The notes under the pieces were generated by a model. It was not told where the DNA came from and did not search any database. It worked only from the letters and a program-made list of their open reading frames with translations. Positions 3,157 through 21,552 of a stretch of DNA of 64,000 nt are shown in pieces. Each line of letters starts with the position of its first letter. Position 1 is the stretch's first letter. Where the stretch lies: contig OZ316897.1 of NCBI GenBank assembly GCA_973895155.1, positions 1,824,515 to 1,888,514 on the forward strand. The letters run 5' to 3'. This DNA is from Marsupella aquatica (taxonomy: Eukaryota > Plantae > Marchantiophyta). The position numbers were made by a program, and so were the translations under genes.

Positions 3157-3333
3157 ATACACCCAAATACGGCCCCAAATAATGAGGTATAAGGTGGCAT
3201 ACACCCAAAATACGGTCCCCAAATAATGAGGTGTAAAGTGACATACACCCAAAATACTATCCTAAATAAGGAGGTATAGAGTGACATACACCCAAAATAC
3301 TGTCCCAAATAATGAGGTATAAAGTGATATACA
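3157..3333. repeat. Tandem repeat, ~4 copies of a ~41-45-bp unit (ACACCCAAAATAC...AAATAATGAGGTATAAAGTGACAT)
   Basis: Repeated units visible directly in the sequence. Confidence 0.85.
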
Positions 3334-3488
3334 TGGCAAACTCAGGTAAGCTGAGAGTCATTAACAAAACCCCACTACCTAAAAAGAGCGAAGTAAAAAG
3401 ACCGGGCATCGGATATCAACTTTTAGAGTATCTCCTCCATTAATGGGGTTCAGGGGTTCACTCAATGTATATGTTTATGGTCCTGACA

Positions 3489-3577
3489 TGCTCCTTAATG
3501 GGGCATATGGGGCGACCCTATGCCGACCCGCGGGAGCGGGGAGGCGTACGGGAGCCCCATTGCCCCATTAAGGAGCA
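3489..3577. repeat. Subterminal hairpin with a ~24-bp stem just inside the left end of the element
   Basis: TGCTCCTTAATGGGGCA(T)ATGGGGC at 3489-3513 pairs with GCCCCATTGCCCCATTAAGGAGCA at 3554-3577. Confidence 0.85.
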
Positions 3578-4476
3578 ATGAAGGACCCTAAATATTTGTT
3601 AAACGATCGTACCCTAGATAAACGGTTGCCATTTGTCGATCTGGTGCAATCGCGCGCTACTTCTGTCACCCGCTGCTGGAGAGGCACCATGTCTCAAGCA
3701 ATCCCTGCCTTTCATTCAAACGTCAACGTCCCGGATGATCTCATAACCAATTCAGGTTGATCCAATGGTGCAGATTGGTAGGGTTACTGGCTGGACGTGA
3801 CACTATTGTAGGTTACTTAGTCTGCGCGAGTGACGCACTGAAGCAATTTTGCACTCCCCATTTCTGTGACGCCGTGAGGCTGCACTGTTTGAGATCGGGT
3901 GCTGAGAGATTTTTCTATGAACCAGCTTTGTAGATTTGTCGAGCTTTGTCTACGATATACTATTAGGGTAGTAAAGTATATCGTACTATCTAGGGTATAG
4001 AGGTTTTGTATGTGTGCTATATGAGCACTTTGTGTTTAGTTTGAGTTGGTGTGAGGGATAGTTATCCCCTTGTGTTGGCTCAAAGGCCTCATCTTTCAAT
4101 GTTGAGCCTTTGAGCATGAGCTTGGTGGCTATGGTGTGGCTGACCAGGTTGTGTGCAAGTAACGTGGATTCCTTGAAGCACAAGGTGCGTTGGGCTTGAC
4201 ATATATGTGTGATCGTGTCGGACGGGATCGTTGTTGGATTAGCACTGATCGTTGTTCGATTTCATCCAGAAAAGATTACATTGAAAGATCACTGCAGGTT
4301 GATTCGAAGCTGTTTCGAAGCTTGCTGTATTGCAGAGTTGATCCATGATCCATGGTCACGATGGAGTCCGCGTTGCGACGAGGTGCGGCGGCGACCTAGG
4401 GCACAAGGAAAACGACAATATTGTTGAACAGTGTTTTGGTCCGAGAATTGCGGCGTGTTTTGTGGCGCGCCTTGTT

Positions 4477-4919
4477 TTGGACTGGGATCATCCGAGTCCA
4501 ATTGTGGGTTGTCTCTTGAGATTTCATTTTGACTCAAAGTTGGATTTGGATTGGGATCATCTGAGTCCAATTGTGGGTTGTCTCTTGAGACCGCATTTTG
4601 ACTCGAAGTTGGATTTGGACTAGGATCATCCCAATCCAACTATACATTGGTAACTTCGGACCCCATTTGGACTTGAAGTTGAAGTTGGACTGGGATCATC
4701 CCAATCCAACTGTACATTGACAACGTTGGAGACTTGATTTTGGGCGAAGGTGAAATTGGATTAGGATCATCTCAATCCAACTGTATGTTGGCGTGTCCAG
4801 AGACCTCATCTGGACCTTGAAGTGGATTTGGATTAGGATCAACCCAATCCAACTGTATCTTGGCGACTTCACCTGTGTAGAGGATGTGAAGGACTTGGAC
4901 TGGGATCATCCCACTCCAA
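4477..4919. repeat. Array of 7 copies of a 25-bp palindrome (consensus TTGGAYTRGGATCATCCCAATCCAA) at 67-72-bp period
   Basis: Copies start at 4477, 4546, 4615, 4685, 4756, 4828 and 4895. Spacers are diverged but related to each other. Confidence 0.9.
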
Positions 4920-5443
4920 CTTGTGGACCGGGCGTCCGGATGACTATTGAATGGATTTGAATTGGAGGTTCACCCCGACGTAGCGAAGTGTGGCGGGTGT
5001 GAAGGGCTCCCTTAGGCTCATCTCGGCGTTTCAAGGCGACTCGTGACGAGGGGCGTGAGGACGGAACAGGAGCCAGACCGGAGCGGGCCGCAAGGTAGCT
5101 TGTTGGTACGTGAGGAGTAGTTGACAATTGGTTGGTTTGGAGTGCCTAAGTTGGTGCATAACTCCAAGGGGGGAGGTCACCCATCCCAAAGCTATTCCTC
5201 TTGCGCGTGCTTAACCATGGAGTTCTTATGGCATGTAGTGTACACACAAGTTTTCACAACTTGTTGTCTAAGTTAAAGGGCTAGGGGGCTTTATACACTT
5301 ATTAGTTTGTCTAGAGACCTGTTTTGGGCCAAATTAGATGCTACTTGGAGGTTTTTGATGCTTCTGAATCCATCTAGATGCATAGATTGGATTAATTTTG
5401 CATGGATTCTTAGCTACAACCTTGGGGCATTGTGAAGCCTATT

Positions 5444-8400
5444 ATGAAGGTGATGGTGATGATTTAGGGCAGATTTGTCATCACGGATTCTTCGGGTGCT
5501 ACGGAACTGTCCGAGGGACAAAGGACCGGTTTCACTCGAAGTGGGGTGCCGTTTCGGCCAACGACATTGATAGCAGTTCCAAGTGCAGCTTCAAATAGTG
5601 ATTCTGTTGAGGACTCTGTGACCATTTCTCCTTGTCATCGGGTGATTGCACCTTTGTTGTGGGATATGGAAGAGATGTACGGGGCTACAAAGGGTCCACG
5701 ACGATACTCTGGTGCAGTTGGCACGATTGATCTGGATGACTTCATCCAAGAGTTTGATACGTGATGCGACATGCAGTCATTGCGTAATGCCACGTTGTTT
5801 ACCCCTTTCATGGCATGGAAGGGATTATTTCAGCATTTGGAGGGGCCACCCATGGATGATTACCATGAGTTTCGGAAGGCTCATTTGGTTGAGATTGAGG
5901 CATGGAGGCAACATTGGTCACCTAATTATGTGTCCATCACCTATGGCACTAGAGCGACTGCCCAACCCATTGCTACAGTTGTTGCTTCTTCTAGTAGCAC
6001 TAGCCAGAGTGGCACACCATCTACCAGTACCACTCCAACAACATCCACCGCTACTCCTACCAGTATGATTGTGACAGGGGTTGGAGTCACGCCAACATTT
6101 AACCCTGTGGTGGAGTTCTTTGAAGTATTAAAGCAAAACTATCAGGGTGTGAGGACTGATAAGTTGAAGGGTCTCCAGGAGTTTCAGCGCAAGACTGGAG
6201 AGAGTCTACGTGAGGCATACACTCGTATGTGCAGATTGATCACTATCACCAAGGGAGTGACAGAGGCTCAAGCAGTCCAATTTTGGTATGCAATTCTGGA
6301 TAGAGAATTGCGACGTAGAGTGAGAGATGTCACTCTGCTTAGGGATGCAGATCCCACATTGGCAGTTGTTTTTACACTTTCTGAGCGAATTGAGCTCAAT
6401 ATGGTGAATGAGAAGGTGGTGACTTCCGGATTTGCCAAGGAAGCACCCAAGGCTGCATCTACATCGACACCACAGCCTGTTGCACGGAAGAGCCAGAGGG
6501 AGAAGCCTACTGCACGAGAGTCTACCAGTCAGAGACCTGTGCCTTCCTATGCTGGACAACAATCAGGATGTTGGACCTGTGGTGGGGATCATGCGCAGCG
6601 GTATTGCCCTGATCCTAGAGGGTCAGGAGGGGCCTCAGCACCTGATCAACGGCAGTGTGATCATTGTGGAGCTCCTGGACACACCAAGGATAGGTGTTTC
6701 TCACTCCATCCCGAGTTACGGAGAGGGGGACAACGCACACATGATCAGGGAAGAGGAGGTAGAGTTGGTGGTCGTGGCCGAGGTATGCCACATGTAGCAA
6801 GGCAGGGAGGTGAGGTTGCTCCTGCTGTGACCACAGATCCTAAGGATGCTAAGATTGCTCAATTGGAGCAACAACTAGCTGCTATGGCTAGTTCTCAGGT
6901 GAGACCTGCTTCTGGTGATGGGGCTTCTACATCCTATGGAGCTTCCACATCTTATGGGGTTGATGGAGATCTTGCCACCATGGGATTCATGTGTGGCACT
7001 GCACACATTGATGCATCAACAGCTTTGACGCGTGGGGCAGCAAAAGTTCTTGAGCCCCGAGGAGCAGTAGTGGACCTAGATCCACAGAGGGGGGATGCAC
7101 GTCGTCAGACAAAGCTTCCTCAGTCTTTTACATTGTCAGAGACAGTTCCGACTGCCTCTATGAACTCGATTCGGACAAACCCTAGCGTAGGTAAGTTGGC
7201 AGAATCAGGTAGTGATGCAGCAGGGATGACAGGTACCCTGCTGGGGGCGGCTACTACCATAGTGCGCACCCCATTATTTTCAGCTACAGACATGCTGAAC
7301 TTGGGAGTTGGTCCTGCAGAAGTGTTCAGATTGGCAGCTACACTCTGTGAGGACACTCCAGTTGTTGCTTCCCATGCAAAAGCAGCTTGCAGTGTTGAAG
7401 TTGAGAAGACCATGCCACCTACGGCTACTAGCGAGACCTGGCATGCAGCAGCAGCGAGGTTGGTGGATTTACCAGCACGCCCTGCATTTGAGAGGACTAG
7501 GTTTAAACCTAGTGTTGTGTCATTGGATAATCGGAGTGGTATCTTCCGATTAGTTGGGCCTACTGGAGCCATATACCAGCTAGAGAGAGTGTTACTGGAT
7601 ACTGGTGCTCAGCCCTTGATGTTGGGTAAGTCTGCGGTACGAGGATTGGCATTGCGTCCAGATGATCTGGAGGAGTGTCCCTTTCCTATTCAAACATCAT
7701 TGGGGGGACCTACACCCACACAACACATCACCAGACGACCACTTGAATTGAGGATTCAGGAGGGTCATGCCAAGGATAGCTCCCACATACAGGCGCGAGC
7801 TATTTTGACTAAGGCCGAGTCCTATGATGTGTTGGTGGGATGTACAGTGTTATACCCCATGGGATTTATTCTTGATTTTTGGGATGAATCAGTATCATAC
7901 AGACTTGATTGGCAGTCAGGAGATGCTCGATTGAGCAGGTTGCCAGTGCGATTTAGTGGACCTGTGGGAGGCCCTAAATCCACACTATTGTCTTTGGCAG
8001 CCTTCAGTGGTGTGATCACTGGTCCTGATGATTTGATGGAGGGTAATGCACATGCAACAGATGTTCCATCAGTGGAGGAGTCACATGAGGAGCAGATGGT
8101 GTGAAGGAGCAACCTGGATTGGGATGATCCCAATCCAACTAGTGTTGTGCCACCAGTATGGGGTACTGCACAAGCCTTGCCGCAAAGGGCAGCACAATTG
8201 GTACATGATGCATGGCGTCATGCTTTTACACCATAGTCAGGAGCAGAGCAATCTCCTACAAGTGGGCCAGTGACTCTTTCACCATTGGATACCACTCCTA
8301 TTGCATGGCAGTATCCACCAGAGGGTATTTGTTTGCTTGATCTATTTGGTGGAATTAGCACTGGATTGGCTGCTATTCTTCAGGCAGGAATTCCTGTGCG

Positions 8401-9103
8401 TCGATACTTGTATGTGGAGACAGATGAGACAACACGGAGAGTCTCATTGCGCCATTTGGCTATGTTGGTAGACCGTTATCCACAGTTGTTGCCAGTGGAT
8501 GCTGTTCGTGGCTATCAGCATGCATTGCCGGCTGATATTTCATTGCTGGGGGCGGATCATTTGGATCGCGTTGGCCCCATTGATTTGGTGATTGCTGGTT
8601 GGCCATGTCAAGGCCAATCAAGAGCTGGAGTTGGACATGGACTTCATGATCCACGCTCTGCATTGTTTTGGGAGATGTTACGGGTATTGCGTCATCTCCA
8701 ATTACACCAAACACATTTGCCTGCCTACATTTTGGAGAATGTGCCACTATTGGGTGATGAGCGTCATCGACTTGTTGCTAGTGTACATCAGGTCAGATCT
8801 TGGATTGGACCTGCTGTATTATTGGATGCTGCACGTGTGGGTTCTCGTGCACATCGTCCACGCTTGTGGTGGACTAATTTGTTACCTTGTGAAGTGTTGA
8901 AGCGAGCATTTGATAGCATTCCTCGCTCAGCATCCTTGGTGGTGGATGATATTTTGGATCCAGGGCGTTGTGCACAACATGTGACCCAGTCTGACAGATC
9001 TCCATTGGCAGTGGTCAATGTAGTTGGTCGTCCGCGTTGTGCATTACCCACTTTTGTGAGCCATTCTGCTTCATATACCATTCAAGATCGCTTTTACGGA
9101 TAA
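5444..9103 (+). pseudogene. Ty3/Gypsy-type Gag-protease-C5 DNA methyltransferase (DNMT3-like) polyprotein, interrupted by in-frame stops and 3' truncated
   Basis: ORFs 5546, 5771 and 8270 share one frame, with stops at ~5465, 5762, 8102 and ~8234. Gag core (LQEFQRKTGESLREAYTR), CCHC knuckles CWTCGGDHAQRYC and CDHCGAPGHTKDRC, protease LLDTGAQ. DNMT motifs LDLFGGI (I), IAGWPCQG (IV), ILENV (VI), RPRLWWTN (VIII); motifs IX-X absent. Confidence 0.88.
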
Positions 9104-9240
9104 GGCGATGCGTGATCAGCCTTAAGCAGCGGTGGAGTTTAGGGTCGAGTGGATTAGGTCACCCACGCTGTCCGGGTGACCGTGTTTTCTGGCAAGAGCA
9201 TGTTGGCTCTTTTGCAGTTAACCTTGCATGCTTATAAGTT

Positions 9241-9667
9241 CTACACTAAAATCAAAATGATAATTCTAGTAACAAGGGTAGTGGGTATTAAGAAAGGTTC
9301 AGGTGAAACTAAAATACTGTTAAACCCTATTTCACCATACTTGCGGACCAACACATCACGAAAATTAGTTTTCTTACGACATATGATCCTAATATCTCCA
9401 AGAGAAAATGAAACAGGAATATCATTCGGACTCCTATTCAGATCCATGACTTCAATAAAGGACAAAGATGATGCACTCCCACTCCTCTCGGTACGACACC
9501 ACTGGGTATATTATTGGCTCGTTAGAAACCATAACAGCAGTTGCAAACTGAGCTCCAAAATGATAGGTTAGATGTTGCCTCATAGATGGTTTGTCTAAAA
9601 GATGGACTCTAATCAAAAACGGATTACGAAGGGGAAGATCAGGGATAACTCTCTCTCCTGGATTCAT
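9241..9667 (-). CDS. Two tandem paralogous small ORFs of unknown function (9667-9452, 71 aa; 9447-9241, 68 aa)
   Basis: Mutual similarity IRV..DKPSMRQHLTYHFG.....VMVSNEPIIYP vs IRI..KKTNFRDVLVRKYG.....ILVSPEPFLIP; both end in a hydrophobic run. 4 nt separate the TGA from the next ATG. TATAAATA on the minus strand at ~9887-9894. Confidence 0.5.
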
Positions 9668-9987
9668 GATGGCTCTTCTATTCCTTTGCTATCCGGGCCA
9701 AAGGACGCCCCACCCCTATATTCCCAAAGAAACCTTATTCCCTAAGGTCCCATCTATAAATCTACCACTCATTCCTTTGCTATCCGGGCCAAAGGACGCC
9801 CCACTACTATGTTCAAGGCACAAAAGAGCTTCACAACCTTGAATGATAAACACTGCGGAATGAGGGGAGAGTGTCCCTCACCACTTTATTTATAGTGCAC
9901 ACCAAGAGGGCATGGATCAAGCCCAAGCACTTGAATGAAGGCCAAGTGTCAAACATCTAATACCTAAGAGTGTGCTAGTACTATTCA

Positions 9988-10175
9988 TAGTTGGTGAAAC
10001 TACTTTTAGTAAGTGGAACTACCATGCGTTGGTGGAACTACTATGCGTTGGTGGACCTACTGTGCGTTGGTAGAACTACTATGCGCTGGTGGACCTACTG
10101 TGCGTTGGTAGAACCACTATGCGTTGGTGAATATTATCGTAGTTGGTGGAACTACTCACATGCATTGGTGGAACT
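9988..10175. repeat. Tandem repeat of a ~20-bp unit (ACTATGCGTTGGTGGAACT-like)
   Basis: About 9 degenerate copies visible. Confidence 0.85.
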
Positions 10176-10842
10176 TCTATAGTCCGTTAATATAGCTAAA
10201 GAAGTTTAATAAAGTTTAAATTTAATAATCTAACTACTAAATTACTTATATAATCTATAGCATATTAAAACAAACAATTTTTTATAACTTAAGAGAAAAT
10301 TACGACAACGCCACATAACCAAGTCGGGCGGCACAATTTACGCAGCCTTGCGTTTAGGGTTTGCAGCTCGGCCTCCCACGTGTTGAGTCGGCCTTGCCTC
10401 GCCTTGGTGTGGGGGGGGGGTAAAGGAGGCAAGAGGTCCCACTTGGGCCTCATTCTTCTTCCCTCCTCCTCTTTTTCGCTCCTCCGCTCCTGCGCCTCCG
10501 CTCCTTCGCTCCTGCGCCTCCGCTCCTCCGCTCCTCCGCCTCATTCGCTTCCAGTCTCCTTAGGCCCCACTCCACCTCCGCCTTCACACTAGAGTTTCTG
10601 CCCTAGCCGCCACGTTAATTGCCCTAGATCTAACGCTCTGTGATCCTCCACGTGTCCATACGATCACGTGTCACAAGATGGATCCATCTAGACCTATTCA
10701 TGTGTCTTTGGTCGTTGAGCCAACAGAGGAGATAGACCTCTCCTCCATTGAGGATGTGGTAGACACGGCCCTCGAGGATTCCAGAGCCTTCCAATTGCTC
10801 AATCCAAGTAAGTATCTCGGTAACAAGTTGAATATTTGTGCA

Positions 10843-11387
10843 GTGGACAGAGATCATCCCTGTCCAAGTAGAGTCCAAGTAGAAGATAGTGATCTTTATT
10901 AGGAATTGGATAGAGATGATCTTTGTCCAAACTGAGGACAGAGATCATCCCTGTCCAATTGGATAGGGATCATCTATTTCCAAAATGACGATAGAGGATG
11001 TCCAACCAGAGGATCAAAACTGTTCTATCAGAGGATGCTGAGGATCTTTATTTGGAATTGGATAGAGATGATCCCTATCCAAGTAGAGGATAGAGATGAT
11101 CCCTGTCCAATTCCTAATAAAGATCGTCAGTATCCTCTGATCGAACAAAGATGATCTTTATTAGGAATTGGACAGAGATCATCTCTATCCAAGTAGAGGA
11201 TAGAGATCATCCCTATCCAAGTAGAGGATAGAGATGATCCCTGTCCAATTCCTAATAAAGATTGTCAAAATCCTTTGATCGAACAAAGATTATCTTTGTT
11301 ACAAATTGGACAGAGATCATCCCTATCCAAGTAGAGGATAGAGATCATCCCTGTCCGGCCAATTGGATAGGGATCATCTCTGTCCAA
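10843..11387. repeat. Intronic cluster of ~12 copies of the 25-bp palindrome (TTGGAYAGAGATSATCCCTRTCCAA)
   Basis: Copies at 10843, 10906, 10934, 10959, 11058, 11086, 11168, 11196, 11224, 11306, 11334 and 11363, all inside intron 10808-11464. Confidence 0.9.
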
Positions 11388-13069
11388 ACTGTGAGAGAAC
11401 CTCATCTTTGTCAATTACAAATTATGATTTTCCAAACTAATATGCATGGATGGGACTATTGCAGGGAGCGATCTAAATGGATTGAAACCAGCAATTTCAG
11501 AATCAGATTGCTCCGAGGGAGTCTTGTTGGAGCAGAGAAAACCAGATTTTCGTTGGGGCCTTGAGTTCTCTAGAGTTGATTTTGATTTCCTTAGCACGTC
11601 AGAGAGACGGGATCCCATTTTGTGCATAAAGGTCAGAACAGAAGATCAAGAGACTCTTGTACTCGGACCTGTAGTCTTCATTGGAATTGAAGGAAGAGGG
11701 TTTGTTTCCATCATTCTTGAGCTCCATGAAAGGATACGATGGGTTAAGCTACATCTACCATCAAAGGCGTATTCTTCAGAGTTCAATGTTGAGTGGTCTG
11801 CTGCTGGAGAACTTGGCGTGATGGCAATGGGCTTTTTCCCTAAGTCGTATTCAACTCAAAAGGTGATTGCTGGAGTGAAGGGGATTCTTCCACTTGACAT
11901 CATGTATGGGTTCCAATATGTGAAGCTGAATATCCATAAACACCAAGGGAATTATACATTTCCGGTGACATGGATTTTAAATAATTTGCTTGACAAGGCA
12001 GGATTCCTATCTTCGGAATCAGGTGTTTGCCTTGACAAGCAAATTGCATTTGCAGAGGAGTTTGCGATGGACAATGCAAAAAAGTGGGTAGAATCATTAC
12101 CCAAGCCTACAAATGTTGCACCAGTAGTGGTGAACGAGCTTCCAGTAGTTGTTAACAAAGAAGTTCCCAAACCTAGAAAAATATCTCAGGAGACAACAAC
12201 AGGGACTGCAGGAACAACGGCTGGGACAAGCACCAAACAAGTGGTAGGGAAGCGAAGACTAAGAGAGAGGAAGGGTCGCGAGAAAATTGAGACATTGCCG
12301 AAGGAACCCGAGAAGAAGCCAGTAGCGAAGAAACAGAAAACTGACAAGTCTCTTTTGCGGTCAACCCCTACGGACGTACAGATGCTCCCAGAAGATGAGG
12401 GAGACAAACTTGATGCCCCTGAGGAGAAGAAGGTCTTAGAAGGAAATGATGTTCTCCAGAGAATAGAGCAGTACTATACTTTTGGGATAAATGAACTGTT
12501 TTCTATTCCAGTGGAGAAAATTGTGCCTGCACCTGCAAGATTATGTTACAGGATGCTCAGTAGTACCCATGTGAAGCACATAGCCGAATCCATGGTCAAA
12601 AACCCCGGACATGAACCTCACGTCGCGGACCTGCTTCCTTATAGTATGAAGCTTAGAAAGTTGCTCCATTTTGACAGCACGGAGAACGACCGCAAAGACT
12701 TTCTTGTAGGAGTGAAGAAAGGCGAGATTGGTTTCTTTGCCATCAGTGGGCAACATTCGGCTAGGGCGGCCAAGTGGGTTCTCGAATGGGCCAAAACTGA
12801 TGCCAAGCTCACAGTGTTGGCAAAAAGTTAAAATACAGGAAGTCTAGATTATTGTCAGACCTTACACCATCGGCTATATTGGTTGAGCACTCAATGAGAT
12901 CAAATGCCATCAATTCGACGATGGTGTTTCAATCATGCTTCAAAGATACAATTGTTCATGCAAGGAAACAATTCCTTGAATGCGGAGGACCAAGAAAGCC
13001 AAAGCACGGGGACAACAAGTCAAACGCCCAAGAGAATCAAAAATTTCAGGTGAGAAACACTTTTCTTGT

Positions 13070-13484
13070 TTGGACAGAGATGGTCTCTGTCCAAGAGTGT
13101 GACCGTCCGTTACATTGATTTTAGTTCAATATATTTTTGGTTATGACTTGGATGGAGATGGTCTATGTCCAAGAGTGTGATCGTCCATTCTAGAGATTTC
13201 TCTTCCTTCTACTTTTGGTTATGACTTGGATGGAGATGGTCTCTGTCCAAGAGTGTGATCGTCCATTCTAGAGATTTCTCTTCCTTCTACTTTTGGTTAT
13301 GACTTGGATGGAGATGATCTCTGTCCAAGAGTGTCATCGTCCATTCCAGAGATTTCTCTTCCTTCTACTTTTGGTTATGACTTGGATGGAGATGATCTCT
13401 ATCCAAGAGTGTCATCGTCCATTCCAGAGATTTCTCTTCCTTTTACTTTTAGTTATGACTTGGATGGAGATGGTCTCTGTCCAA
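13070..13484. repeat. Intronic 78-bp tandem repeat, 6 units each carrying the 25-bp palindrome (TTGGATGGAGATGRTCTCTGTCCAA)
   Basis: Palindromes at 13070, 13148, 13226, 13304, 13382 and 13460, inside intron 13050-13556. Confidence 0.92.
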
Positions 13485-16179
13485 CAAGCAAGTGATAGTT
13501 TGTTGTCAAATCTCATTGATTGTAGATAACTTATTTTCCCCTAATTTTGACTGTAGGATTATTTGGCATTGGCAAGGATGACCATGGGGAGAAAAGACTT
13601 GAAAAATGTATATTGGTTGCTCTTTGCCGAGAATGATCTTTTCAAGCTCTGGCGATTAGTATGCCAGATGTGGATTGATGGACATCTTCCTGATGGAGCT
13701 GGTACACAGGGAAACAAAAGGTCCGAAAAGGGTATAACGGTCGCAATGTTTCGTTGTTTTGATGGTGAAATATCAAGTAGAGATTTGACCAGAATTTTGA
13801 ACAAGGTGAAGTCAGGTCAGGTTTTATTGAAGAAGGATCCGACAAATAAGTCAGATGTTCCAGCAATGGAGGACTTTGCAAAGGAGGTGAAGATATTGAT
13901 CAAACTGAAGTCTCTTATTGGAGATTACTACTTCAAGAAGGATCCAAAAAACTTCCCAGCAGATAGTGATTGGGTTAAAGTAATTGAGGTCCTCCCATTG
14001 TTAGGTGTCGAGTCGGAGTTGAACAGGTGCCGAAGAGCGGCTGGTGAAGTATGGTTGAAAAATTTATTGAAGTCTAATCATACAAAGGAGAGTGAGATAT
14101 TGCCAATGACATTGGTGATGCGTCTAGATGATATTACTGTCAAAAGTTTGGCGGGGGGACAAGTTCTTGGACCCAACCGTGGGTCACATTTTTTAGTAAC
14201 AACCTAATGAAGACAGTCGATCTAGAGTCGTTGGAAGAACAATCTCCAACATGCCCTCTTGCAATTGTTGATTTCAGCCGACTTCAACAGAAGGAGTGGA
14301 CCGAAGCAGAGATTTTGGTACTCTTCCAATACATAGTAGAGCTACCACGGAATCCCACCATTGTTGTGATGATAACTGTCCATCCGGGTTACCTTGTACT
14401 GAATGTCCTAAGCGCTCTTCGTAAATTAGGACATTCAAAAACTCTGACTATTCACATTGAGTATGGGAGTTATTACCGAGATGATCAACCTCACCCTCAC
14501 GACTCATGTTGGAAGGGAGGAATAGAAGAAGTTATCTTTGCGGGAATTTCTCGTGAAGAGAACGTCAGCTGGGATGAAGTGTTCAAGCCCAACCAGATGA
14601 AGCCAAAATGGGTGTACGGTGAAAAGGATACTGATTTCGTGGTTGAGAAGGTCAAGGGAAAGGGAAAGGCAAAGGGCGCGGACGAGGAGTCATTACATGA
14701 AGATCTAAGAAATATGATGACCCCAGAAGAGGCGGCAATACTTCTGCACATGGCACCTCGATTTGAGACGGTCGGCGCTCGGGGTGGGTGGGTGAATCCT
14801 CACGCCAAACCCACACGGATGATCCAAAAGATCATCCAAACACTGTCCGAGCCGGGGGATTTGATTCTTGACTTTTTCTCTGGCGGTCAAGTGATGAAGG
14901 CATCCCTTTTTTCTCAATGTGAATGTTTTGTTTATTGTGACTCTCAACATGAGAGACATTTTGTGGAAGCATATGCTTCGTTCCTTTGTGAGAAGGTTCC
15001 CACCATCAAAGATCGTTATGATCCCTATGTCGGTGGAAGTTCTAGACATTGGGAACCCTCTTCTGCCGTTGTTGCTATTGACGATGAATCAGATGGTGAT
15101 CAAGAAGATGGAGTTGACCAATCAGTCAAAGACGATGGGCCATCGGAGGAGGCATACGTGAAGAATTTGGATGACCGAGTTGGCGAGGGTGAAAATATTG
15201 ACCTTGTGGAAGACGATATGATTGTTGGATCTGCACCTTGCAGTTCACCAATTACAGATGTTGCCCCCATGGGACCCAACGAGGGCCAGTATGATGATAA
15301 CTTGGATAGAGATGGTCTCCATCCACAATTGCCTGGACAAGAGATGGAAGCTGATACATTTGAAAAACTGTCTTCAAACAACCTTCTCAATCAAGGTGCG
15401 GAGAGGCATGGTGAGTCCAATGAACTCGACACATTGGGATTGAGACCGCAGCCCATCCAAATAGTTGACATTCCTGTGAATGAAGCAAGTGCATCCACGA
15501 CTGCTGACAACCAGGCAGGTGCTTCAATTTGTCCCGATACACTCTTTTCCGCTTCTGATGACAAATTGGTGTTTGTTCGATCACAATCAAGAAGTCCCGT
15601 TATCCTTCCACTCTCAAAAAAGAAAGGGAAGAGAGTAGGATCAACTGGATATAAGTCACTTGAATATGATTGTCGATGTTACGTGTGGAAAAGTGGACCC
15701 GATGTAGGAACTGAAGTTGCGTTGGATGCTGCTCAATCAATTTTGAACAATGACTCGTACAAAAAGCACAAGAAAGATCCAACTTATAGAAGTGGAGAAT
15801 TGGGATTGATAACTCCGGTTTGGTCTGCACCTTATTGGATAGAGGAGAGTACCTCCGATGTCAATTATGAGATCCAACAAGAGCTCGGTGATGATATCTT
15901 GATTGATGAATATGGATCGCATTGTTAGCCAAGGTCTAGATGAGCGATGTGACCTTATCAATTTGATATAATATAGTCTGTATAATTATACTTCAAGTTT
16001 AACAATTAGAGCATCAGTATCAATATCCATCTCCTCTTTACGGTTTCTCAATGAATACGATCAGTATGCAGATATATTTTCTTTGTGGTTGGCCACTTGT
16101 GTTCGGTTGACAGAGATGATCTCTATCCAAACTTCAAATGTGGTTTTTTCTCTAAGATTGGTATTTGTTGCACTTGCAG

Positions 16180-17216
16180 AACCAAGACTTTGTTCCATCA
16201 AGCGCAAATTGCTGATTTTGGATCTTAACAAAATACTTTGGGATTCAGTTGAATTCCAAAGCAAGGGCAAATCCAGAAATGTTGTGACCCCAACTGGAGT
16301 GCATTGGGATAGAAAAAATGGAATTAGTCGCATGTACACAGAAAGGCCAGGGCTCCATGAGTTTCTAAAGTTGGTTTTTGACCGATTTGACGTTGCAATT
16401 TGGACATGTGCTGGGGTACATCGAACAGTGAAAATGCTGAACATGATGTTCACTGCTGAGGAGCGGTTGAAACTTAAGTTTGTATTCACACAGGTGGAAG
16501 CCTTTGACACAGGCATTCAAAGGCGTGACATTACAAACGGAAAGGCAAATGTGCTACTGAAGGATTTTCGGGTGGTATGGAGTGGATTTGGAAATCTATA
16601 TGATGAAACCAACACCCTCCTTGTGGATGACTCCCCCCTTAAGGCATTTGCCAACCCAAGCATGACCGGACTATTTCCAGTGCCCTACACGCATGCCAAT
16701 GGTGGAGATAATTTTCTTCTAACAATTCTTTGGCCTTGTCTTGAGAAACTATCCCATGCAAGTGACAATAGATGTTATCTTCTTCTTAACTCTCCACTGT
16801 GGTCTCTATTGCACATAAAGAGAGACAAGGTAAAAAATGAAATTACTTATGATCAACTTAGTAAGAGATGTGCAACAAAAATTTGGAAGTCACAGTTTAC
16901 GCATACTGTGTTGGACCTCAATAGCAATGAGATTCCTTGGAACATGAAGCATCGTATATGTAGTTTACGTCCTGAGGCAGAACTTGATGATGCACTTGTC
17001 ACGTCACTTGCTAAAGCATTTGTAGGAAGGGACTATTCAGGTCCACATAGAGAAAATCCCAGACACTTTTTGCGGGAGATTATAGCCATTAGGAACAACA
17101 CCACCAAGTTTCAGCTCCCTAAAGATAAAGGGACTTGCAACCGTGACACTAGGGTAGATAGTAAAGGAGACAGGGGCACGTGCTCAAATACACATTGTAA
17201 GGAGCACTTTGTTTAG
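16180..17216 (+). CDS. FCP1/NIF-family HAD phosphatase-like domain, probably a terminal exon
   Basis: KLLILDLNKIL (motif I-like), RPGLHEFL..VFDRFDVAIWT, LLKDF..VW, NTLLVDDSPLKAFANP. Acceptor CTTGCAG at 16173-16179; no convincing independent start codon. Confidence 0.8.
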
Positions 17217-17363
17217 AGATCTAACTCATGTTAAGCCCCTTAGATAGAAGAAAGACATTGTAAATTTGGAGATAATTGTATATTATTTTATAATCTATTT
17301 GGAGTTATGTCATTTTGTTCACACATATTCAAGGGTTTCTTTGTGCTGAAATGTTTTTATAAG

Positions 17364-17571
17364 TATGATCTCTATCCTACTATTCTTTGTGAATTAATAA
17401 ATAATGATCTCTATCCTATTATTCTTTGTGAATCAATAAATGATATAATATGTATTATTTATTAATATAATACTAATATGATTTGGCCTATAAAGTGTAC
17501 ATTTAGGGACCAAAAAGTGTACATTTGGGTTTCTTAAAGTGTACATTTGGGGACATGAAAGTGTACATTTC
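17364..17571. repeat. AT-rich short repeats: ATGATCTCTATCCTA..ATTCTTTGTGAAT x2 (palindrome half-sites) and AAAGTGTACATTT x4
   Basis: Visible directly in the sequence. Confidence 0.7.
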
Positions 17572-18587
17572 AAGACTGATTTGTGAACAAAAGAAAATAC
17601 ACTTTTAATGAATAGGCTGATAAGGGACTCTATTTCTCAAGGAGACGCGCTCCTAATTTTCTTTTGAACGCTTCGACTAAAACTGTGTTAGGTGTTGTAA
17701 ACTATGTAAGAGTCGGTGCGGCCTCCAAAGACTACAGTAGTTTCCGAGAATGACCTAGTCTAGCTAGAGCAGATGCATAGAGGCACTTTCTCCTGATCAG
17801 TTTCTAATAGCTAGATCATGCAATTGGCTGTTTGTGCATGTCATCACTCTCTGTCTGGGCGCTCATGTTTCATCCATTTTCTGCCAGTGTATCTCGGTGA
17901 GTAATTAAATGGACCTTGGCCTATCGAGATTTTTTGCCGTGTCTTGATGTGAATTGTTTGAAGTTGAATCTGAGCATGCATTTGTCGTCTGCTCTTGGGT
18001 TATGTTCACTGCCAACTGAAGGGCCCTGATTGTTGCTATGAATCAGGGGCATATGATAGCAAAGAAGTTGTGACTCGTGCATAGCTTGTACTAAGAATGT
18101 AATGCTGGAGGAAGAGGCTCTCCCTGCTGCATTATCTGATAATTTTATGCCTACTAACTTCCGCAAACCATTGCCTCGCATTTTATTTTCAGATTGCTGT
18201 ATAATGTTTGTGTGATAATGCACTTGGGCTACAGTGTACTAACTTCCGTTGCTATGCACTCTGCTCAAATTGACTTATGCATTGCTCTGATGTACATTTT
18301 GCCACTGTGGTTGTCGGTCAATCCTCTTTTTTCAGTCAAATCTAGACGATGAGGACGCTTCATCATGCCTCCGAAAATATCCCAAGGTTTTTTTGACTGG
18401 TTTCTTGCATTCGTTTTCACTGTATACTTTCTCAATGAAGTTGGGAGGCGTTCATGGTCCTTCAGCTCGATCTACATTGTTTAGGCTCACTCGACTTCAT
18501 TCAATGCTTCCCTTGAGCAACTGGATTTTATTGACTATAGAGCCAGATCGAGGCATTGTCGTAGCCAACTGATCGCCTGCTTATGAC

Positions 18588-20621
18588 ATGAATGATGAAG
18601 CAGACGTTGCTCGACAGATCGCGCCATCTTTCAGCTTGGGAATGTCTGCAATGACTTTGACAGACACAACCTCATCTGGAACAGTGCTTGAGCCATTGAC
18701 TGAGTGTTCATCTGGCGCTGAATCGTATACTAGTTTAGAATCAGATATACAGAACCTGAATGGAGACCCTGAATGGAGACCCAGATATTATTGCCCTTGA
18801 ATCGATGTCCTCAAAACTGCTAACAGTCAATCTTCCGAACGGTTCTTCATGTGAGTTTCTTCCTGAAGATCAACAGTTTCAGCGCACCCTTGCCGAGGGT
18901 GGCAGTAATCCAAGTGCTGCGGTTGATCAACGGGCAGCGAATCGCCTTAACAAGTTTTGTGAGTTCAAGGGGTTCGACATTGCCATTCTGTTCAAGGAAA
19001 TACCTGGTCAAGATTGTGTAATGCTGCTCACCAAGTTTTTTGAGCAAGTTTGCAAGAAAGATGGTGACCTCTATCCCTCTTAGACCCTGATGGGACTGTA
19101 CCGCGCCTTCCATCGCATTCTCAGGAAGAAACAAGAGAGATGCGCAATCGAAACAGGTAAGGAAGAGCCAGTGTTTGACATGAGATCTTCCCCTCTTCAA
19201 ACCAGTGGCTATTGCATGTGTTTTGGCTATGGAGCGGTCGAAGAAGGCAGGTGCAAACCTGCCAAGAAAGAAGGCCTCGGTAATCACCTTTGCTGATGAA
19301 GCTACTATTCTGGCTCATTCGAGCACTTTTGTCACGCATTCCAGAGGCCTACAGCGGAGGGCAATCTTCTTTTTACTAAACCGATTCTGTATCCGTGGCG
19401 GGAAAGAACTCAACAATCTCAAGAAGTGTGATTTCATGTTTGGAGATGATGTGCATGGTAGTTTTGTTAAATATGACAAGAGGCTTAGCAAGAACTATCG
19501 AATAAGCATGTATCGTTACCAAGAAGAGCACTTTAGGCCTGCTGTGATCAACTATGACTTCGATGTGCTTGAAACACTTAGGATGTTGATTCATCATCTT
19601 CCAGTAAGTGCCGTATTTCTCTTTTACCAATGCATCGATCATCCAAGAACTCATGCTTGGTATTCAACTTCTAGACTTGGTGAGAAAACGTTGGGCTCTT
19701 GTCTTAGGATTTTACACCAAGAGGCAAGACTAGGCACAGTTGGTGTATCCAACTAGACAGGGCGCACAACTTGCATCTCGCGGATGGGTGCTGAGAGTGT
19801 CCCTCCGAAAGTCGGGTTGAAGATTTCTGGTCACAAGAGCGAGGGTGCATATGAACGATATGATTGTAGTTCTGAGGATCAAGTGCGAGCCGCATTGAGA
19901 TGTGCCACTGATGGCACTCCTTACTCTTCGACAGTGAGTATGGAGACAGCAAAGGGGACGCGGGTGCTCATTGATGGAGGTTCAGGTGAGGATGAGACTG
20001 TCCCGGTTGTTTCTGTTGATGGTGTTACAGGCCAGGTCGGGACTGTCCCTGCTATTCTTGTGGATGAAGGTCCACAACTGAAGAAAGCGGAGGATGGAGC
20101 ATCAGTAGAAGGTAATGAATTTCCTATTTTTGTGGAAGTTCTTGGGTTAGATTGTGGATCATGAGGATGATAAGTTTACTTTTGTGTTTTGTACGGTGTC
20201 CGAATGTGCAGATTCAAGTTTGCAGACTGGGCTGAACTCAGAAGTCCTAGTTGAGGCTGCTCACTGTGAAGCAGCTGTTACAGTTGTGATCTTTGAGCTC
20301 GAGCCGGAGGCTGTGGTGCCTTCCCTGATAGCACCAAGCTGTGATGAGCCAATCCACTTCAATCAACAGCCATAGTTTAATGCTTTTGACTGTTTTCTTG
20401 AGTCCATGGACTGGGACGTGTTGAGTGCTGAGCCAAGGTGGAGAGGGATTGCTCCCCATGGGGTGACTGTTGTTAACAGGGTTGTGCTGCATACTGTTTT
20501 TGATAAAATTAAAGCGCTAACCAATTGCACCATGAATGGTTGCACATTCAGCCTTAATTTTGGCCCACATGGAGGAGGACCTGGAGGAGGTGGAGATGGA
20601 GGAGGAGCGGCATTAATCTAG
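18588..20621 (+). pseudogene. Crypton-type (DUF3504/ZMYM-like) tyrosine recombinase, disrupted
   Basis: LTKFFEQVCKKDGDLYPS*TL binding-domain motif; catalytic R in FCIRGGKEL; SN*TGRTT (HxxR position); ISGHKS; catalytic Y in YERY; C-terminal NCTMNGCTFSLNF. Lesions: 13-bp duplication CCTGAATGGAGAC (~18755-18780), stops at 19081, 19754 and 20373, frameshifts at ~19190 and ~20155. Confidence 0.88.
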
Positions 20622-21102
20622 GCTTAGTTATTTAGTAGACTATAGAGAGTAGACTATGCTCAGATTATAGACACTAGACTGCTCAGTAGACTAAGCTCAG
20701 ATTATAGCAGCTAGTGAAAAGTAACTCGTATGGGTGTCCAGAAGGAGGTGTTACTATTCTTTAGCTTTATGAGCCATTGAACTGTAATTTTTGTTTACAC
20801 ATCAATAAAGTTCTTTCCCCCACCGTGGGATTTCATTATCAAAGTTCTTGCGTTTTTTAATCTTCCAGCTGTATCCACAAATTACCTGGTGTACAAATAC
20901 ACCTGAATTCCCTAACGGTATCCACATTTTACTTGGTGTACAAATACATCTCAAAATATGGTTTAAATTAATGAGATGTAAAGCTGACAACGTGGCAAGC
21001 TCTGATAAGGGAAGAGCAATAAAATCACCGAACGACCCTTAACGTATACATTAAATACCCTGTATTCTGACACTCTAACTTTAATATATTGGTCAACTTT
21101 TA

Positions 21103-21552
21103 GAGCATCTCCTACATTAATGGGGTTCACGGGTTCACTCAATGTATACATTAAATACCCTGTATTCTGACACTCTAACTTTAATATATTGGTTAATATA
21201 TTGAGTGTATGGGCTGAGTGATGCTAAAGTCCAACCCCAATGGATATGGGATATTTTAAATAAGGGGTTTCTTGAAGACACATATTAGAACATTAGACTG
21301 CCTCGTTCCAGCAAAGAAGAAGACTTTCCTCCACCTTACCATCCATATCTGCTGTATCCAGTCAAGAACCCTGTGGATGGAGCACAGCGGGATTTGACCT
21401 CCACAATCCCGTTCCCGCAAGAGAAAACCCCATGAAAGAAAAATACGGTCCCGTTCCCGTTCTACCATAGGGTCTTTTTTTTATATATTGCTTCACGGGG
21501 TTGGTGAAAATCCCCGTCCCCGTTAGCCAACCACTCTGCATAGGAGATGCTC
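21103..21552. mobile_element. PIF/Harbinger (Tourist-like) MITE
   Basis: TIR GAGCATCTCCTA (21103-21114) / TAGGAGATGCTC (21541-21552); TTA target duplication at 21100-21102 and 21553-21555. Confidence 0.88.

What the first reader, a model, noticed from the sequence alone, without database searches (positions are those of the whole stretch)
3472..21043. Giant cargo-carrying tyrosine-recombinase element (~17.6 kb) with exact ends in a plant genome
Seen: the interval is flanked by GTATA (3467-3471, 21044-21048). Removing it plus one GTATA rebuilds a 100-bp unit whose intact twin lies at 21093-21193, giving an internal empty-site control. Inside are a Crypton-type YR near the right end, a ParB-MTase(-HAD) gene, a Gag-PR-DNMT3 ORF, two mini-ORFs and ~28 copies of one palindrome. 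Known: Cryptons are YR DNA transposons with short terminal direct repeats and normally little cargo; fungal Starships are large YR elements with cargo. Inference: this is a decayed member of a possibly undescribed plant family of large integrative YR elements that move through a circular intermediate.
Basis: partly seen in the sequence, partly recalled or inferred. Interest (0 to 1): 0.95.

Follow-up and report, generated by a model that had tools for sequence, protein, structure and literature searches.

The report
Liverwort Crypton stuffed with nested transposons
A small cut-and-rejoin (Crypton-type) jumping gene of a liverwort landed precisely inside a 100-bp repeat, but most of its 17.6 kb is best read as pieces of other jumping genes lying inside it, not as the cargo of a new family of giant elements.

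Summary
A 17,572-bp insert (3472-21043) is flanked by GTATA, and removing it rebuilds a 100-bp unit that matches its intact neighbour at 97 of 100 positions.

The giant-cargo reading is not supported.
- **Ends:** both ends match those of a 3.4-kb stand-alone Crypton in Calypogeia fissa. These are a 125-150-bp palindromic left module and a short right-end motif.
- **Spacing:** in two relatives the left module lies 0.3-0.6 kb before the recombinase gene. Here it lies 15.2 kb before it.
- **Retroelement piece:** 4050-9076 is a truncated piece of a very high-copy retroelement (Gag, protease, C5 methyltransferase).
- **Second repeat:** 9077-9700 belongs to another high-copy repeat.
- **Gene block:** 10844-17600 holds a ParB-like gene, a methylase-like gene, a CTD-phosphatase-like gene and palindrome arrays. 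The same block occurs in eight other contigs without any recombinase. Earlier notes of this scan place it in 12-13.5-kb Sola1-type transposons of this genome. Papers from 2025 report a ParB-methylase accessory gene in an algal Sola-1 transposon.
- **Decay:** the recombinase gene has two stops and one frameshift.

Best reading (about 0.65): an ordinary small Crypton later filled by nested insertions and deletions. The scan found this Crypton family and the cassette before, on other DNA of this genome. I could not exclude that the composite once moved as a unit (about 0.15-0.2).

The parts
3467..3471 (.). Left copy of the 5-bp direct repeat GTATA (crossover core). It lies within the hybrid site AATGTATATGTT at 3464-3475.
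3472..3595 (+). Left-end module of the Crypton: one long imperfect palindrome that starts at the terminus. It contains two inverted copies of the half-site (G/C)GACC(A/C)T(A/T)AA(C/T).
   Evidence: Inverted repeat I6. DNA fold -49.5 kcal/mol, z -11.3. Homologous to L010 9532-9683 (local alignment z 10.9; alignment A3) and built like L012 6753-6876.
3596..4049 (.). Low-copy stretch between the end module and the retroelement fragment. It is probably the Crypton's own spacer, but its origin is not settled.
   Evidence: summed depth about 6-19 times the unique level at 3500-3699; a roughly 90% identical paralogue contig covers 3696-3943. No similarity to the L010 spacer.
4050..9076 (+). Truncated piece of a very high-copy retroelement. 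It holds an upstream region with 7 palindromes (4478-4918), a Gag-protease ORF (5771-8104), one palindrome at 8115 and a C5 cytosine methyltransferase ORF (8270-9103). There is no RT or integrase.
   Evidence: summed depth 300-1500 times the unique level. Loose ends before 4050 show other flanks in other copies. Behind 9076, 12 + 18 contigs continue with a different sequence. Pfam PF00145 E 2.6e-11. Zinc knuckles and a DTG motif were read in the translation.
9077..9700 (-). Fragment of another high-copy repeat ('Z'), with a conserved minus-strand coding piece at 9241-9667.
   Evidence: bin 9100-9299 is about 290 times the unique depth; 50-57% amino-acid identity to an insert that splits ORF-B in L003. 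No Pfam match.
9971..10160 (.). 19-bp tandem repeat (7 copies) of unknown affiliation.
   Evidence: family D3
10844..11393 (.). Array of 12 palindromes (consensus TGGAYAGAGATSATCTCTRTCCA) upstream of ORF-A.
   Evidence: Relatives carry their own, different palindrome arrays at the same place.
11446..13061 (+). ORF-A, with a ParB/sulfiredoxin-like C-terminal domain (conserved SGQHSA motif). It has one frameshift near 12813-12825.
   Evidence: collinear with the L002 572-aa gene, in two frames. Alignment A2. Model pLDDT 76, with the top Foldseek matches Noc/ParB/Srx/KorB at probability 0.9-0.99.
12992..13484 (.). 78-bp tandem repeats, each with one palindrome (6 copies), between ORF-A and ORF-B.
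   Evidence: (family D1)
13557..15937 (+). ORF-B: a conserved N-terminal domain, an amino-methyltransferase-like domain (FSGGQ kept; DF[STG]R in place of DPPY), an acidic linker and a conserved C-terminal domain. It has one frameshift near 14135-14156.
   Evidence: Pfam PF01555 scores 25.2 bits, below the 26.7 cut-off. PDB matches RsrI and CcrM at E 0.014-0.064.
16083..17216 (+). NIF / CTD-phosphatase-like gene. The reading frame is open. It has LDLNK in place of the DxDx(T/V) motif.
   Evidence: Pfam PF03031 E 7.7e-15. Ten relatives. Motif check.
17491..17592 (+). Four 22-bp tandem repeats with the core AAAGTGTACATTT, downstream of the NIF-like gene. The core is conserved in sequence in relatives.
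   Evidence: family D9; L003, L005; a related core in L006 and L011.
18760..19999 (+). Crypton-type tyrosine recombinase pseudogene. It has in-frame stops at 19081-19083 and 19754-19756 and a frameshift near 19190-19210.
   Evidence: Relatives give weak DUF3504 and Phage_integrase matches.
21032..21043 (+). Right terminal motif ACGACCCTTAAC, the third copy of the half-site, inverted relative to the left terminus.
   Evidence: The same motif, ACGACCGTAAC, lies 1.6 kb after the recombinase gene in L010.
21044..21048 (.). Right copy of GTATA, within the hybrid site AACGTATACATT at 21041-21052.
21093..21192 (.). Intact twin of the interrupted 100-bp host unit (the empty-site control). It contains the palindromic target AATGTATACATT at 21141-21152.

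Best explanation
The outer element is an ordinary, small (3-4 kb class) Crypton-type DNA transposon of a family that lives in liverworts.

**How the Crypton got here.** Its recombinase, when intact, would bind inverted half-sites of the form (G/C)GACC(A/C)T(A/T)AA(C/T). These lie at the two termini and inside a 125-bp palindromic left-end module. The recombinase would join the ends into a circle with a lox-like site (10-bp arms around GTATAT). It would then recombine that site with a similar palindromic target (AAT-GTATAC-ATT), leaving GTATA on both sides. This copy integrated into one unit of a 100-bp tandem pair.

**What fills it.** About 14 kb now lies between the left module and the recombinase gene. 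It was not acquired as designed cargo. It is secondary filling of three kinds:
- A doubly or 3'-truncated piece of a very abundant retroelement (Gag-PR-C5 methyltransferase).
- A piece of a second abundant repeat.
- About 7 kb of an accessory-gene cassette: ParB-like ORF-A, methylase-like ORF-B, a CTD-phosphatase-like gene, palindrome arrays and 22-bp repeats. Elsewhere this cassette travels with cut-and-paste (Sola1-type) transposons. Here it has lost, or never had, its transposase.

**What is shown and what is inferred.**
- Shown: the exact insertion, the homology of both termini to a small Crypton, the truncated high-copy fragments, and the independent recurrence of the cassette.
- Inferred: the order of events (Crypton first, filling later, with at least one deletion), the circular intermediate, and binding of the palindromes by the ParB-like protein.
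For: 1. Exact insertion with an empty-site twin, 97 of 100 identical.
2. The left module is homologous to that of the Calypogeia fissa Crypton (L010): the same GTATA|TG start and local alignment z 10.9. The right terminal motif ACGACC-T-AAC is unique in L010 at the expected place. That element is 3.37 kb and has no cassette within 10 kb on either side.
3. The same kind of palindromic module lies 0.3 kb (L010) and 0.6 kb (L012) before the recombinase gene. All three fold with z -10 to -13. In the window the distance is 15.2 kb.
4. Contigs of four runs show that 4050-9076 and 9100-9299 are hundreds-fold repeated. Other copies leave our sequence at 4050 and at 9076.
5. The ORF-A / ORF-B / NIF block with palindromes and 22-bp repeats is collinear in L001-L003, L005-L007 and L011, and L004 holds part of ORF-B. 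These come from at least five samples, and no recombinase protein matches any of L001-L007. In L005 the block is followed within 0.6 kb by an Hsp70-like pseudogene, not by a recombinase.
6. The recombinase carries 3 disabling lesions in 1.25 kb, against 2 in 5.1 kb for the cassette. This fits an older outer element (binomial p about 0.06, my calculation).
7. Unchecked leads that point the same way: earlier notes of this scan describe other Crypton copies of this genome as 3.2-4 kb, and the cassette as part of 12-13.5-kb Sola1-type transposons.
Against: - No second copy from this genome could be read, so I cannot show that the inner junctions (4049/4050, 9076/9077, and the cassette's ends) are unique to this locus.
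- No Sola-type transposase, TIR or 4-bp duplication was found inside the interval. The cassette therefore shows no proof of having arrived by its own transposition.
- All genes, including the recombinase, lie on the same strand.
- Published work says such accessory cassettes move between transposon superfamilies, so capture by a Crypton is conceivable.
- Published giant transposons keep moving with fixed nested insertions.
- The contexts of the cassette's relatives are short (1.8-8 kb).
Confidence: 0.65

Rival explanations
1. The composite is a real cargo-carrying Crypton. A Crypton acquired the ParB-like / methylase-like / phosphatase-like cassette, and possibly the retroelement fragment, between its left module and its recombinase gene. 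It then integrated here as one 17.6-kb circle.
For: - The two ends and the 5-bp repeat are intact around the whole 17.6 kb.
- No transposase or TIR of a second DNA transposon was found inside.
- All genes lie on one strand.
- Accessory cassettes of this kind are reported to hop between transposon superfamilies, and giant transposons carry fixed nested insertions.
Against: - Relatives with the same ends or the same recombinase are small and cargo-free.
- Eight cassette loci show no recombinase.
- The filling includes truncated fragments of two unrelated high-copy repeats.
- The recombinase is more decayed than the cassette.
- Earlier scan notes list only 3.2-4-kb Cryptons in this genome, or one split by a copia element (unchecked).
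Confidence: 0.18
2. The outer element is the cut-and-paste (Sola1-type) transposon that owns the cassette, and the recombinase gene is a Crypton nested near its right end.
For: Earlier scan notes describe 12-13.5-kb Sola1-type elements with this cassette in the same genome. The cassette fills the centre of the interval.
Against: - Both termini of the interval match the termini of a stand-alone Crypton.
- The left module recurs next to recombinase genes in L010 and L012.
- The duplication is 5 bp around a palindromic core that resembles the element's own junction, not the 4-bp duplication usually given for Sola elements (from my own knowledge).
- No transposase was found.
Confidence: 0.04
3. 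The interval is a DIRS-like or other retroelement that combines Gag-PR-DNMT with a tyrosine recombinase.
For: A Gag-PR-DNMT frame and a recombinase lie on the same strand. The algal DNMT3-bearing Gypsy elements are described as having DIRS-like repeat structure.
Against: - There is no RT or RNase H anywhere in the interval.
- Other copies of the retroelement continue differently at 9076.
- There are no long terminal or split repeats.
- Recombinase relatives stand alone, without RT.
Confidence: 0.03

Closest known systems
Crypton DNA transposons (Goodwin et al. 2003; Kojima and Jurka 2011; DUF3504-type CryptonA 'Glomhopper', PMC13465315)
   Same: - A tyrosine recombinase is the only enzyme of its own.
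- There is no RT, no LTR and no long TIR.
- Short direct repeats reflect identity with the target, as the class is described.
- Relatives give DUF3504 / Phage_integrase-like matches.
   Different: - The host is a land plant (liverwort).
- A 125-150-bp palindromic module sits at one end, and a third inverted half-site at the other.
- I found no paper describing this end design for Cryptons, though that search was limited.
- The first His of the HxxR box is Lys in this lineage.
- This copy is five times the family's usual size.
Sola1-1_Ec32 of Ectocarpus (21.5 kb), with a ParB-like + DNA methyltransferase accessory gene (PMC12477816)
   Same: A ParB-like domain and an N4/N6-methyltransferase-like domain are carried as accessory genes in a giant DNA transposon. 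The authors propose that the protein binds and marks its own element.
   Different: - No Sola transposase lies in this interval.
- ParB-like and methylase-like parts are separate reading frames in the relatives I read.
- A CTD-phosphatase-like gene and palindrome arrays are added.
- The DPPY motif is replaced.
Plavaka accessory genes PAG1-3 of red algae (bioRxiv 10.1101/2025.02.11.637652)
   Same: A conserved accessory cassette includes a ParB-like protein with associated tandem repeats and a PF01555 methylase-like protein. The cassette is found in several transposon superfamilies.
   Different: - The partner domains differ: SET and 2OG oxygenase there, a NIF-like phosphatase here.
- The carriers reported there (DDE transposons and Fanzor-encoding elements) do not include a tyrosine-recombinase element.
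- Homology to this cassette was not tested.
KnitGypsy-Dnmt3 of Klebsormidium nitens (PMC5890265)
   Same: A retroelement polyprotein with its own C5 (DNMT3-type) methyltransferase. The family here is very abundant.
   Different: Only a truncated Gag-PR-methyltransferase piece is present here. I did not test the DNMT3 subtype or the Gypsy assignment; those rest on earlier notes of this scan.
Starship elements of fungi (PMC9156397, PMC10104507)
   Same: Tyrosine-recombinase mobilisation, short direct repeats at the ends, and large size with other genes inside.
   Different: - Starships have a DUF3435 'captain' at the 5' end and true multi-copy cargo haplotypes, and are restricted to Pezizomycotina.
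- Here the recombinase is DUF3504-like, sits near the 3' end, and the content looks like nested repeats.

Membership tests
Crypton | Encodes a tyrosine recombinase with the catalytic R...K...R...H/W...Y set | tested here: met
   Alignment A6: IRGG, LSKN, SGRTT, GHKS and AYxRY are conserved in relatives and readable in the window copy. The window copy is broken by 2 stops and 1 frameshift. The first His of HxxR is Lys in the whole lineage.
Crypton | Match to curated recombinase models (DUF3504 PF12012 / Phage_integrase PF00589) | tested here: inconclusive
   For P0014, DUF3504 scores 24 bits (cut-off 29.7) and Phage_integrase 18.4 bits (cut-off 27.1). The window ORFs give no hit. Marchantia relative P0040 is named a DUF3504 protein by UniRef.
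Crypton | No reverse transcriptase, no LTRs, no long TIRs | tested here: met
   No RT domain in any ORF of 100 aa or more. No long direct or terminal inverted repeats. Only 10-bp imperfect inverted termini.
Crypton | Short direct repeats at the ends that match the target (recombination core) | tested here: met
   GTATA lies on both sides. The empty twin holds AATGTATACATT and the element junction would read AACGTATATGTT.
Crypton | Other copies share the termini in different flanks | tested here: met
   Across species, L010 (Calypogeia fissa) shares both termini, and L012 and L008 share left-end motifs. Within this genome there is only indirect support: 6-19 times the unique depth over 3500-3699.
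Cargo-carrying YR element (Starship-like sense) | The same internal genes are found between the same ends in more than one copy | tested here: not met
   Recombinase relatives L010 and L012 have no cassette. Cassette loci L001-L007 match no recombinase protein, and L011 lists only cassette genes. Those contexts are short, and other copies of this genome could not be read.
Starship | DUF3435 'captain' recombinase at the 5' end | tested here: not met
   No DUF3435 match. Relatives lean towards DUF3504. The gene lies near the 3' end (18760-19999).
DIRS / Ngaro / PAT retroelements | RT-RNase H together with the recombinase, and split or inverted long repeats | tested here: not met
   No RT or RNase H. 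No such repeats.
Sola1-type transposon with ParB-methylase accessory genes | DDE transposase of the Sola type, plus TIRs | tested here: not met
   No transposase-like Pfam match in ORFs of either strand. No inverted repeat pairs the candidate boundaries. An intact reference copy was not available to me.
Sola1-type transposon with ParB-methylase accessory genes | Accessory ParB-like and methylase-like proteins with element-specific repeats | tested here: met
   There are 28 palindromes in the window. Relatives carry different palindromes at the same place.
ParB/sulfiredoxin superfamily (ORF-A) | ParB/Srx fold with the GxxR/DGHHR-type box | tested here: inconclusive
   Model pLDDT 76. Nearly all of the roughly 30 best Foldseek matches are Noc, ParB, Srx, SbnI or KorB at probability mostly 0.9-0.99, but E is only 6e-3 or weaker. 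The box reads SGQHSA. No Pfam or PDB sequence match.
N6/N4 amino-methyltransferases, PF01555 (ORF-B) | Catalytic (D/N/S)PP(Y/F/W) motif and the FxGxG SAM-binding motif | tested here: not met
   FSGGQ is kept, but no (D/N/S)PP(Y/F/W) is present. The invariant sequence is CPLxIxDFxR. The Pfam score is just below the cut-off.
FCP/SCP (NIF) phosphatases | DxDx(T/V) catalytic motif | tested here: not met
   PF03031 E 7.7e-15, but the window copy and nine of the ten relatives read LD(L/C)N(G/K); in the tenth (P0004) the motif was not located. None has DxDx(T/V).
DNMT-bearing LTR retroelement (KnitGypsy-Dnmt3 type) | C5 methyltransferase inside a Gag-PR-...-RT-INT polyprotein | tested here: inconclusive
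   PF00145 E 2.6e-11. The family is very high copy and continues beyond 9076 in other copies. RT and INT are absent from this fragment, and the DNMT3 subtype was not tested here.

The most novel reading that the evidence does not exclude
The 17.6-kb composite did move as one unit. On this reading, a Crypton took up the ParB-like / methylase-like / phosphatase-like cassette with its palindromes, a cassette otherwise known from cut-and-paste transposons. That would make it the first tyrosine-recombinase carrier of this cassette and the first cargo-carrying Crypton reported in a plant.
Probability: 0.15. Interest if true: 0.7.

Novelty: new member of a known kind. Interest (0 to 1): 0.35.

Why it matters
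**As proposed.** A new plant family of giant recombinase-driven cargo elements would have been a major finding. The evidence points to a common situation in repeat-rich plant genomes instead: a small transposon that later became a landing pad for other repeats.

**What remains useful.**
- This is a clean case of site-specific Crypton integration in a land plant, with a built-in empty-site control.
- The end design is conserved across liverwort lineages: a long palindromic module plus three half-sites around a GTATA core. That gives a concrete recombination site to test.
- This copy of the accessory cassette adds comparative evidence. Its palindromes differ between lineages while its 22-bp repeats are conserved.
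- All three cassette proteins keep their folds or family matches but lack the canonical catalytic motifs.

The scan had already met both the Crypton family and the cassette on other DNA of this genome.

Tried and rejected
- **LTR retrotransposon as the outer element** (suggested by the 5-bp duplication and a TG start). Rejected: no LTRs, no CA end, no RT.
- **The L005 hairpin as a Crypton end next to ORF-A.** Rejected: it is part of that lineage's palindrome array, as in L006, L007, L002 and L011.
- **More copies within the window.** None found at the DNA level.
- **Cassette relatives in viral contigs.** None. JGI metagenomes gave one short contig.
- **Exact look-up of the window's ORFs in the protein collection.** None present.
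- **Searches for a Sola-type transposase or TIRs inside the interval.** Nothing found. Searches by sequence in earlier findings and in the protein atlas for the 9241-9667 piece also gave nothing.
- **Continuation of the retroelement elsewhere in the window.** Absent.
- **A 3' LTR matching 4050-5770.** Absent. The LTR end and primer-binding site could not be located.
- **Conserved sequence after the 22-bp repeats among cassette loci.** None that would mark a terminus.
- **Similarity between the L010 spacer or 3' region and the window.** Not above shuffles. The exact breakpoints between Crypton DNA and filling therefore remain unplaced on the right side (17600-18700) and uncertain on the left (3596-4049).
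- **Organism names for the cassette relatives.** None given.
- **Steps not taken.** A recombinase tree with Crypton, DIRS and Starship references was not built, because no reference sequences were available from the tools.

Full report
**Observation**

GTATA lies at 3467-3471 and again at 21044-21048. Joining 3416-3471 to 21049-21092 gives a 100-bp unit that matches the intact neighbour at 21093-21192 at 97 of 100 positions (repeat families D11 and D12). The insert of 17,572 bp is therefore bounded exactly and has a built-in empty-site control.

The interval has no LTRs and no long terminal inverted repeats. All larger reading frames lie on the + strand. One 23-bp palindrome occurs 28 times, only between 4478 and 16129. 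Chance expects 0.05 copies in the 64-kb window. No other part of the window resembles the interval at the DNA level.

**The outer element is a Crypton of a small-element family**

The recombinase gene runs from 18760 to about 19999. It has no introns and is dead. It carries in-frame stops at 19081-19083 and 19754-19756 and a frameshift near 19190-19210.

A full HMMER search of 1.84 billion representatives found only 110 relatives. The closest are intact proteins of 556-593 aa. Named relatives come from Calypogeia fissa, Marchantia (called a DUF3504 protein), Ceratodon and Adiantum. Pfam gives weak DUF3504 and Phage_integrase matches below the cut-offs. The catalytic set R, K, R, H and Y is conserved in the alignment. 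Lys replaces the first His of the HxxR box in the whole lineage, and that codon is one of the window's two in-frame stops.

In the Calypogeia contig (L010) the gene stands alone within 10 kb on either side. Its surroundings show the same ends as the window's insert:
- On the left, GTATA is followed by TG and a long palindromic module. See alignment A3. The local alignment z-score is 10.9 against shuffles.
- On the right, 1.6 kb after the gene, lies the motif ACGACCGTAAC. The window's last bases read ACGACCCTTAAC.

That element measures 3.37 kb. A more distant relative on a JGI metagenome contig (L012) has the same kind of palindromic module 0.6 kb before its gene, again preceded by GTAT. The three modules fold as single hairpins with z-scores of -11.3, -9.9 and -12.7. 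L008 has about ten tandem copies of a motif that shares GTTTATGGTC with the window's terminus.

The window holds three copies of the half-site (G/C)GACC(A/C)T(A/T)AA(C/T): at the left terminus, at the inner arm of the module, and at the right terminus. Joined in a circle, the ends would read AAC-GTATAT-GTT between 10-bp inverted arms. The target in the intact twin reads AAT-GTATAC-ATT. This fits the published description of Cryptons as flanked by short repeats that reflect identity with the target.

I infer integration of a circular form by recombination in the GTATA core. No circle junction was observed.

**The interior is a mosaic**

Contigs of four public runs were laid on 3300-9299.
- **Own locus:** the junction at 3471/3472 is present without mismatch in two runs, at a unique depth of about 65-70.
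- **3500-3899:** summed depth is a few to about 20 times the unique level.
- **4050 to 9076:** summed depth rises to hundreds or more than a thousand times unique.
- **At 4050:** contigs of other copies come in from other sequence.
- **At 9076:** 12 + 18 contigs continue with a different sequence, which is absent from the window.

So 4050-9076 is a truncated piece of a very abundant retroelement. It holds an upstream region, a Gag-protease frame (5771-8104) and a C5 methyltransferase frame (8270-9103; PF00145, E 2.6e-11). It has no RT or integrase. Retroelements that carry a DNMT3 are known from Klebsormidium. Earlier notes of this scan report the family in this genome. I did not test the DNMT3 subtype.

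The bin 9100-9299 is again about 290 times the unique depth. Its minus-strand piece at 9241-9667 is 50-57% identical in protein to an insert that splits ORF-B in L003. This is a second, unrelated repeat.

**The ParB-like / methylase-like / phosphatase-like block is a cassette with its own history**

Searches with ORF-B and the NIF-like gene found relatives on short contigs from ENA, Logan and JGI. In L002, L003, L005, L006, L007 and L011 the order is the same, on one strand and without introns. L001 holds only ORF-B and the NIF-like gene. The order is:
- ORF-A
- ORF-B
- the NIF-like gene
- an AT-rich stretch
- 22-bp repeats with the core AAAGTGTACA (found in L003, L005, L006 and L011)

.

Each lineage has its own palindrome array upstream of ORF-A, different in sequence from the window's. 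The palindromes therefore belong to the cassette and change with it, while the 22-bp repeats are conserved. None of the 116 recombinase-family proteins matches L001-L007. L011 was fetched later and lists only cassette genes. In L005 the repeats are followed within 0.6 kb by an Hsp70-like pseudogene.

- **ORF-A:** its C-terminal domain (conserved SGQHSA) was modelled at pLDDT 76. Nearly all of its roughly 30 best structural matches are Noc, ParB, sulfiredoxin, SbnI and KorB. Probabilities are mostly 0.9-0.99, although E-values are no better than 6e-3.
- **ORF-B:** it keeps FSGGQ but has the invariant CPLxIxDFxR where DPPY is expected.
- **NIF-like proteins:** the window copy and nine of the ten relatives read LD(L/C)N(G/K), and none has DxDx(T/V).
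- **In the window:** ORF-A and ORF-B each have one frameshift.

A ParB-like plus methyltransferase accessory gene is published for the 21.5-kb Sola1-1 element of Ectocarpus. That paper proposes that the protein binds and marks its own transposon. In red algae a related accessory cassette is reported to move between transposon superfamilies.

Earlier notes of this scan, which I could not check, describe at least eight Sola1-type elements of 12-13.5 kb with this same cassette in this genome. I found no transposase or TIR of that kind inside the interval.

**Weighing the readings**

The exact ends prove only that the outer Crypton integrated here. Four lines of evidence favour later filling:
- Small size and close module-to-gene spacing in two independent relatives.
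- Truncated pieces of two unrelated high-copy repeats inside the interval.
- Independent recurrence of the cassette without a recombinase.
- Heavier decay of the recombinase: 3 lesions in 1.25 kb against 2 in 5.1 kb (p about 0.06).

Earlier notes also list only 3.2-4-kb Cryptons in this genome, or one split by a copia element.

On the other side, I could not read any other copy from this genome. The cassette shows no sign of its own transposition here, and capture of such cassettes by new carriers is documented.

My estimates are:
- about 0.65 for an ordinary Crypton filled by nested insertions and at least one deletion
- about 0.18 for a composite that moved as a unit
- small remainders for a Sola-type outer element or a DIRS-like element

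**Novelty and score**

Cryptons, DNMT-bearing retroelements and ParB-methylase accessory genes are all described kinds. The scan has already reported this liverwort Crypton family, including its hairpin end module, and the cassette on other DNA of this genome.

This locus adds three things:
- a clean integration site with an empty-site control
- cross-species proof of both termini
- a defined candidate recombination site

I rate it a new member of a known kind, with interest 0.35.

Noticed in passing
window 4478-4918 and 8115-8137: The high-copy retroelement fragment carries 8 palindromes of a subtype (TGGAYTRGGATSATCCCAATCCA) that is 17 of 23 identical to the cassette's subtype (TGGAYAGAGATSATCTCTRTCCA). 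I cannot explain why a retroelement and a DNA-transposon cassette share a palindrome. Copy-number variation of the 69-72-bp units shows as joints in other copies.
   Followed up: partly
window 9077-9700 (minus strand 9241-9667); L003 2008-2434: A further high-copy repeat has a conserved coding piece of about 140 aa with no Pfam match. In L003 the homologous piece sits inside ORF-B of the cassette.
   Followed up: partly
window 17491-17592; L003 5790-5870; L005 6613-6790; L006 about 5960-5992; L011 about 5440-5482: 22-bp tandem repeats with the core AAA(G/A)TGTACA(A/T)TTGG follow the NIF-like gene in cassettes from different samples. They are conserved in sequence, unlike the lineage-specific palindromes. 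This suggests two different DNA-binding partners.
   Followed up: partly
window 3430-3450 versus 3492-3505: The host 100-bp unit contains CTCC(A)TTAATGGGG, nearly the same as the arm of the Crypton's palindromic module. Earlier scan notes report two other Cryptons of this genome inside short tandem repeats. The family may prefer, or create, such sites.
   Followed up: no
L008 300-470: About ten tandem copies of CGCTTATGGTCGTC lie upstream of an intact 593-aa recombinase gene. They share GTTTATGGTC with the window's left terminus and may be an array of recombinase-binding half-sites.
   Followed up: no
L005 7380-7760 (minus strand): An Hsp70-12-like pseudogene, or a gene with introns, follows the cassette within 0.6 kb of the 22-bp repeats.
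   Followed up: no
window 9971-10160 and 10289-10592: A 19-bp tandem repeat (7 copies) and a GC-rich low-complexity stretch of unknown origin lie between repeat 'Z' and the cassette.
   Followed up: no
window 13062-13556; L005 1948-2092; L002 2539-3044: ORF-A and ORF-B are separate frames in all relatives, with gaps of 87-505 bp. In the window the gap holds the 78-bp palindrome repeats. Whether splicing joins them into one ParB-methylase protein, as in the Ectocarpus gene, was not tested.
   Followed up: no
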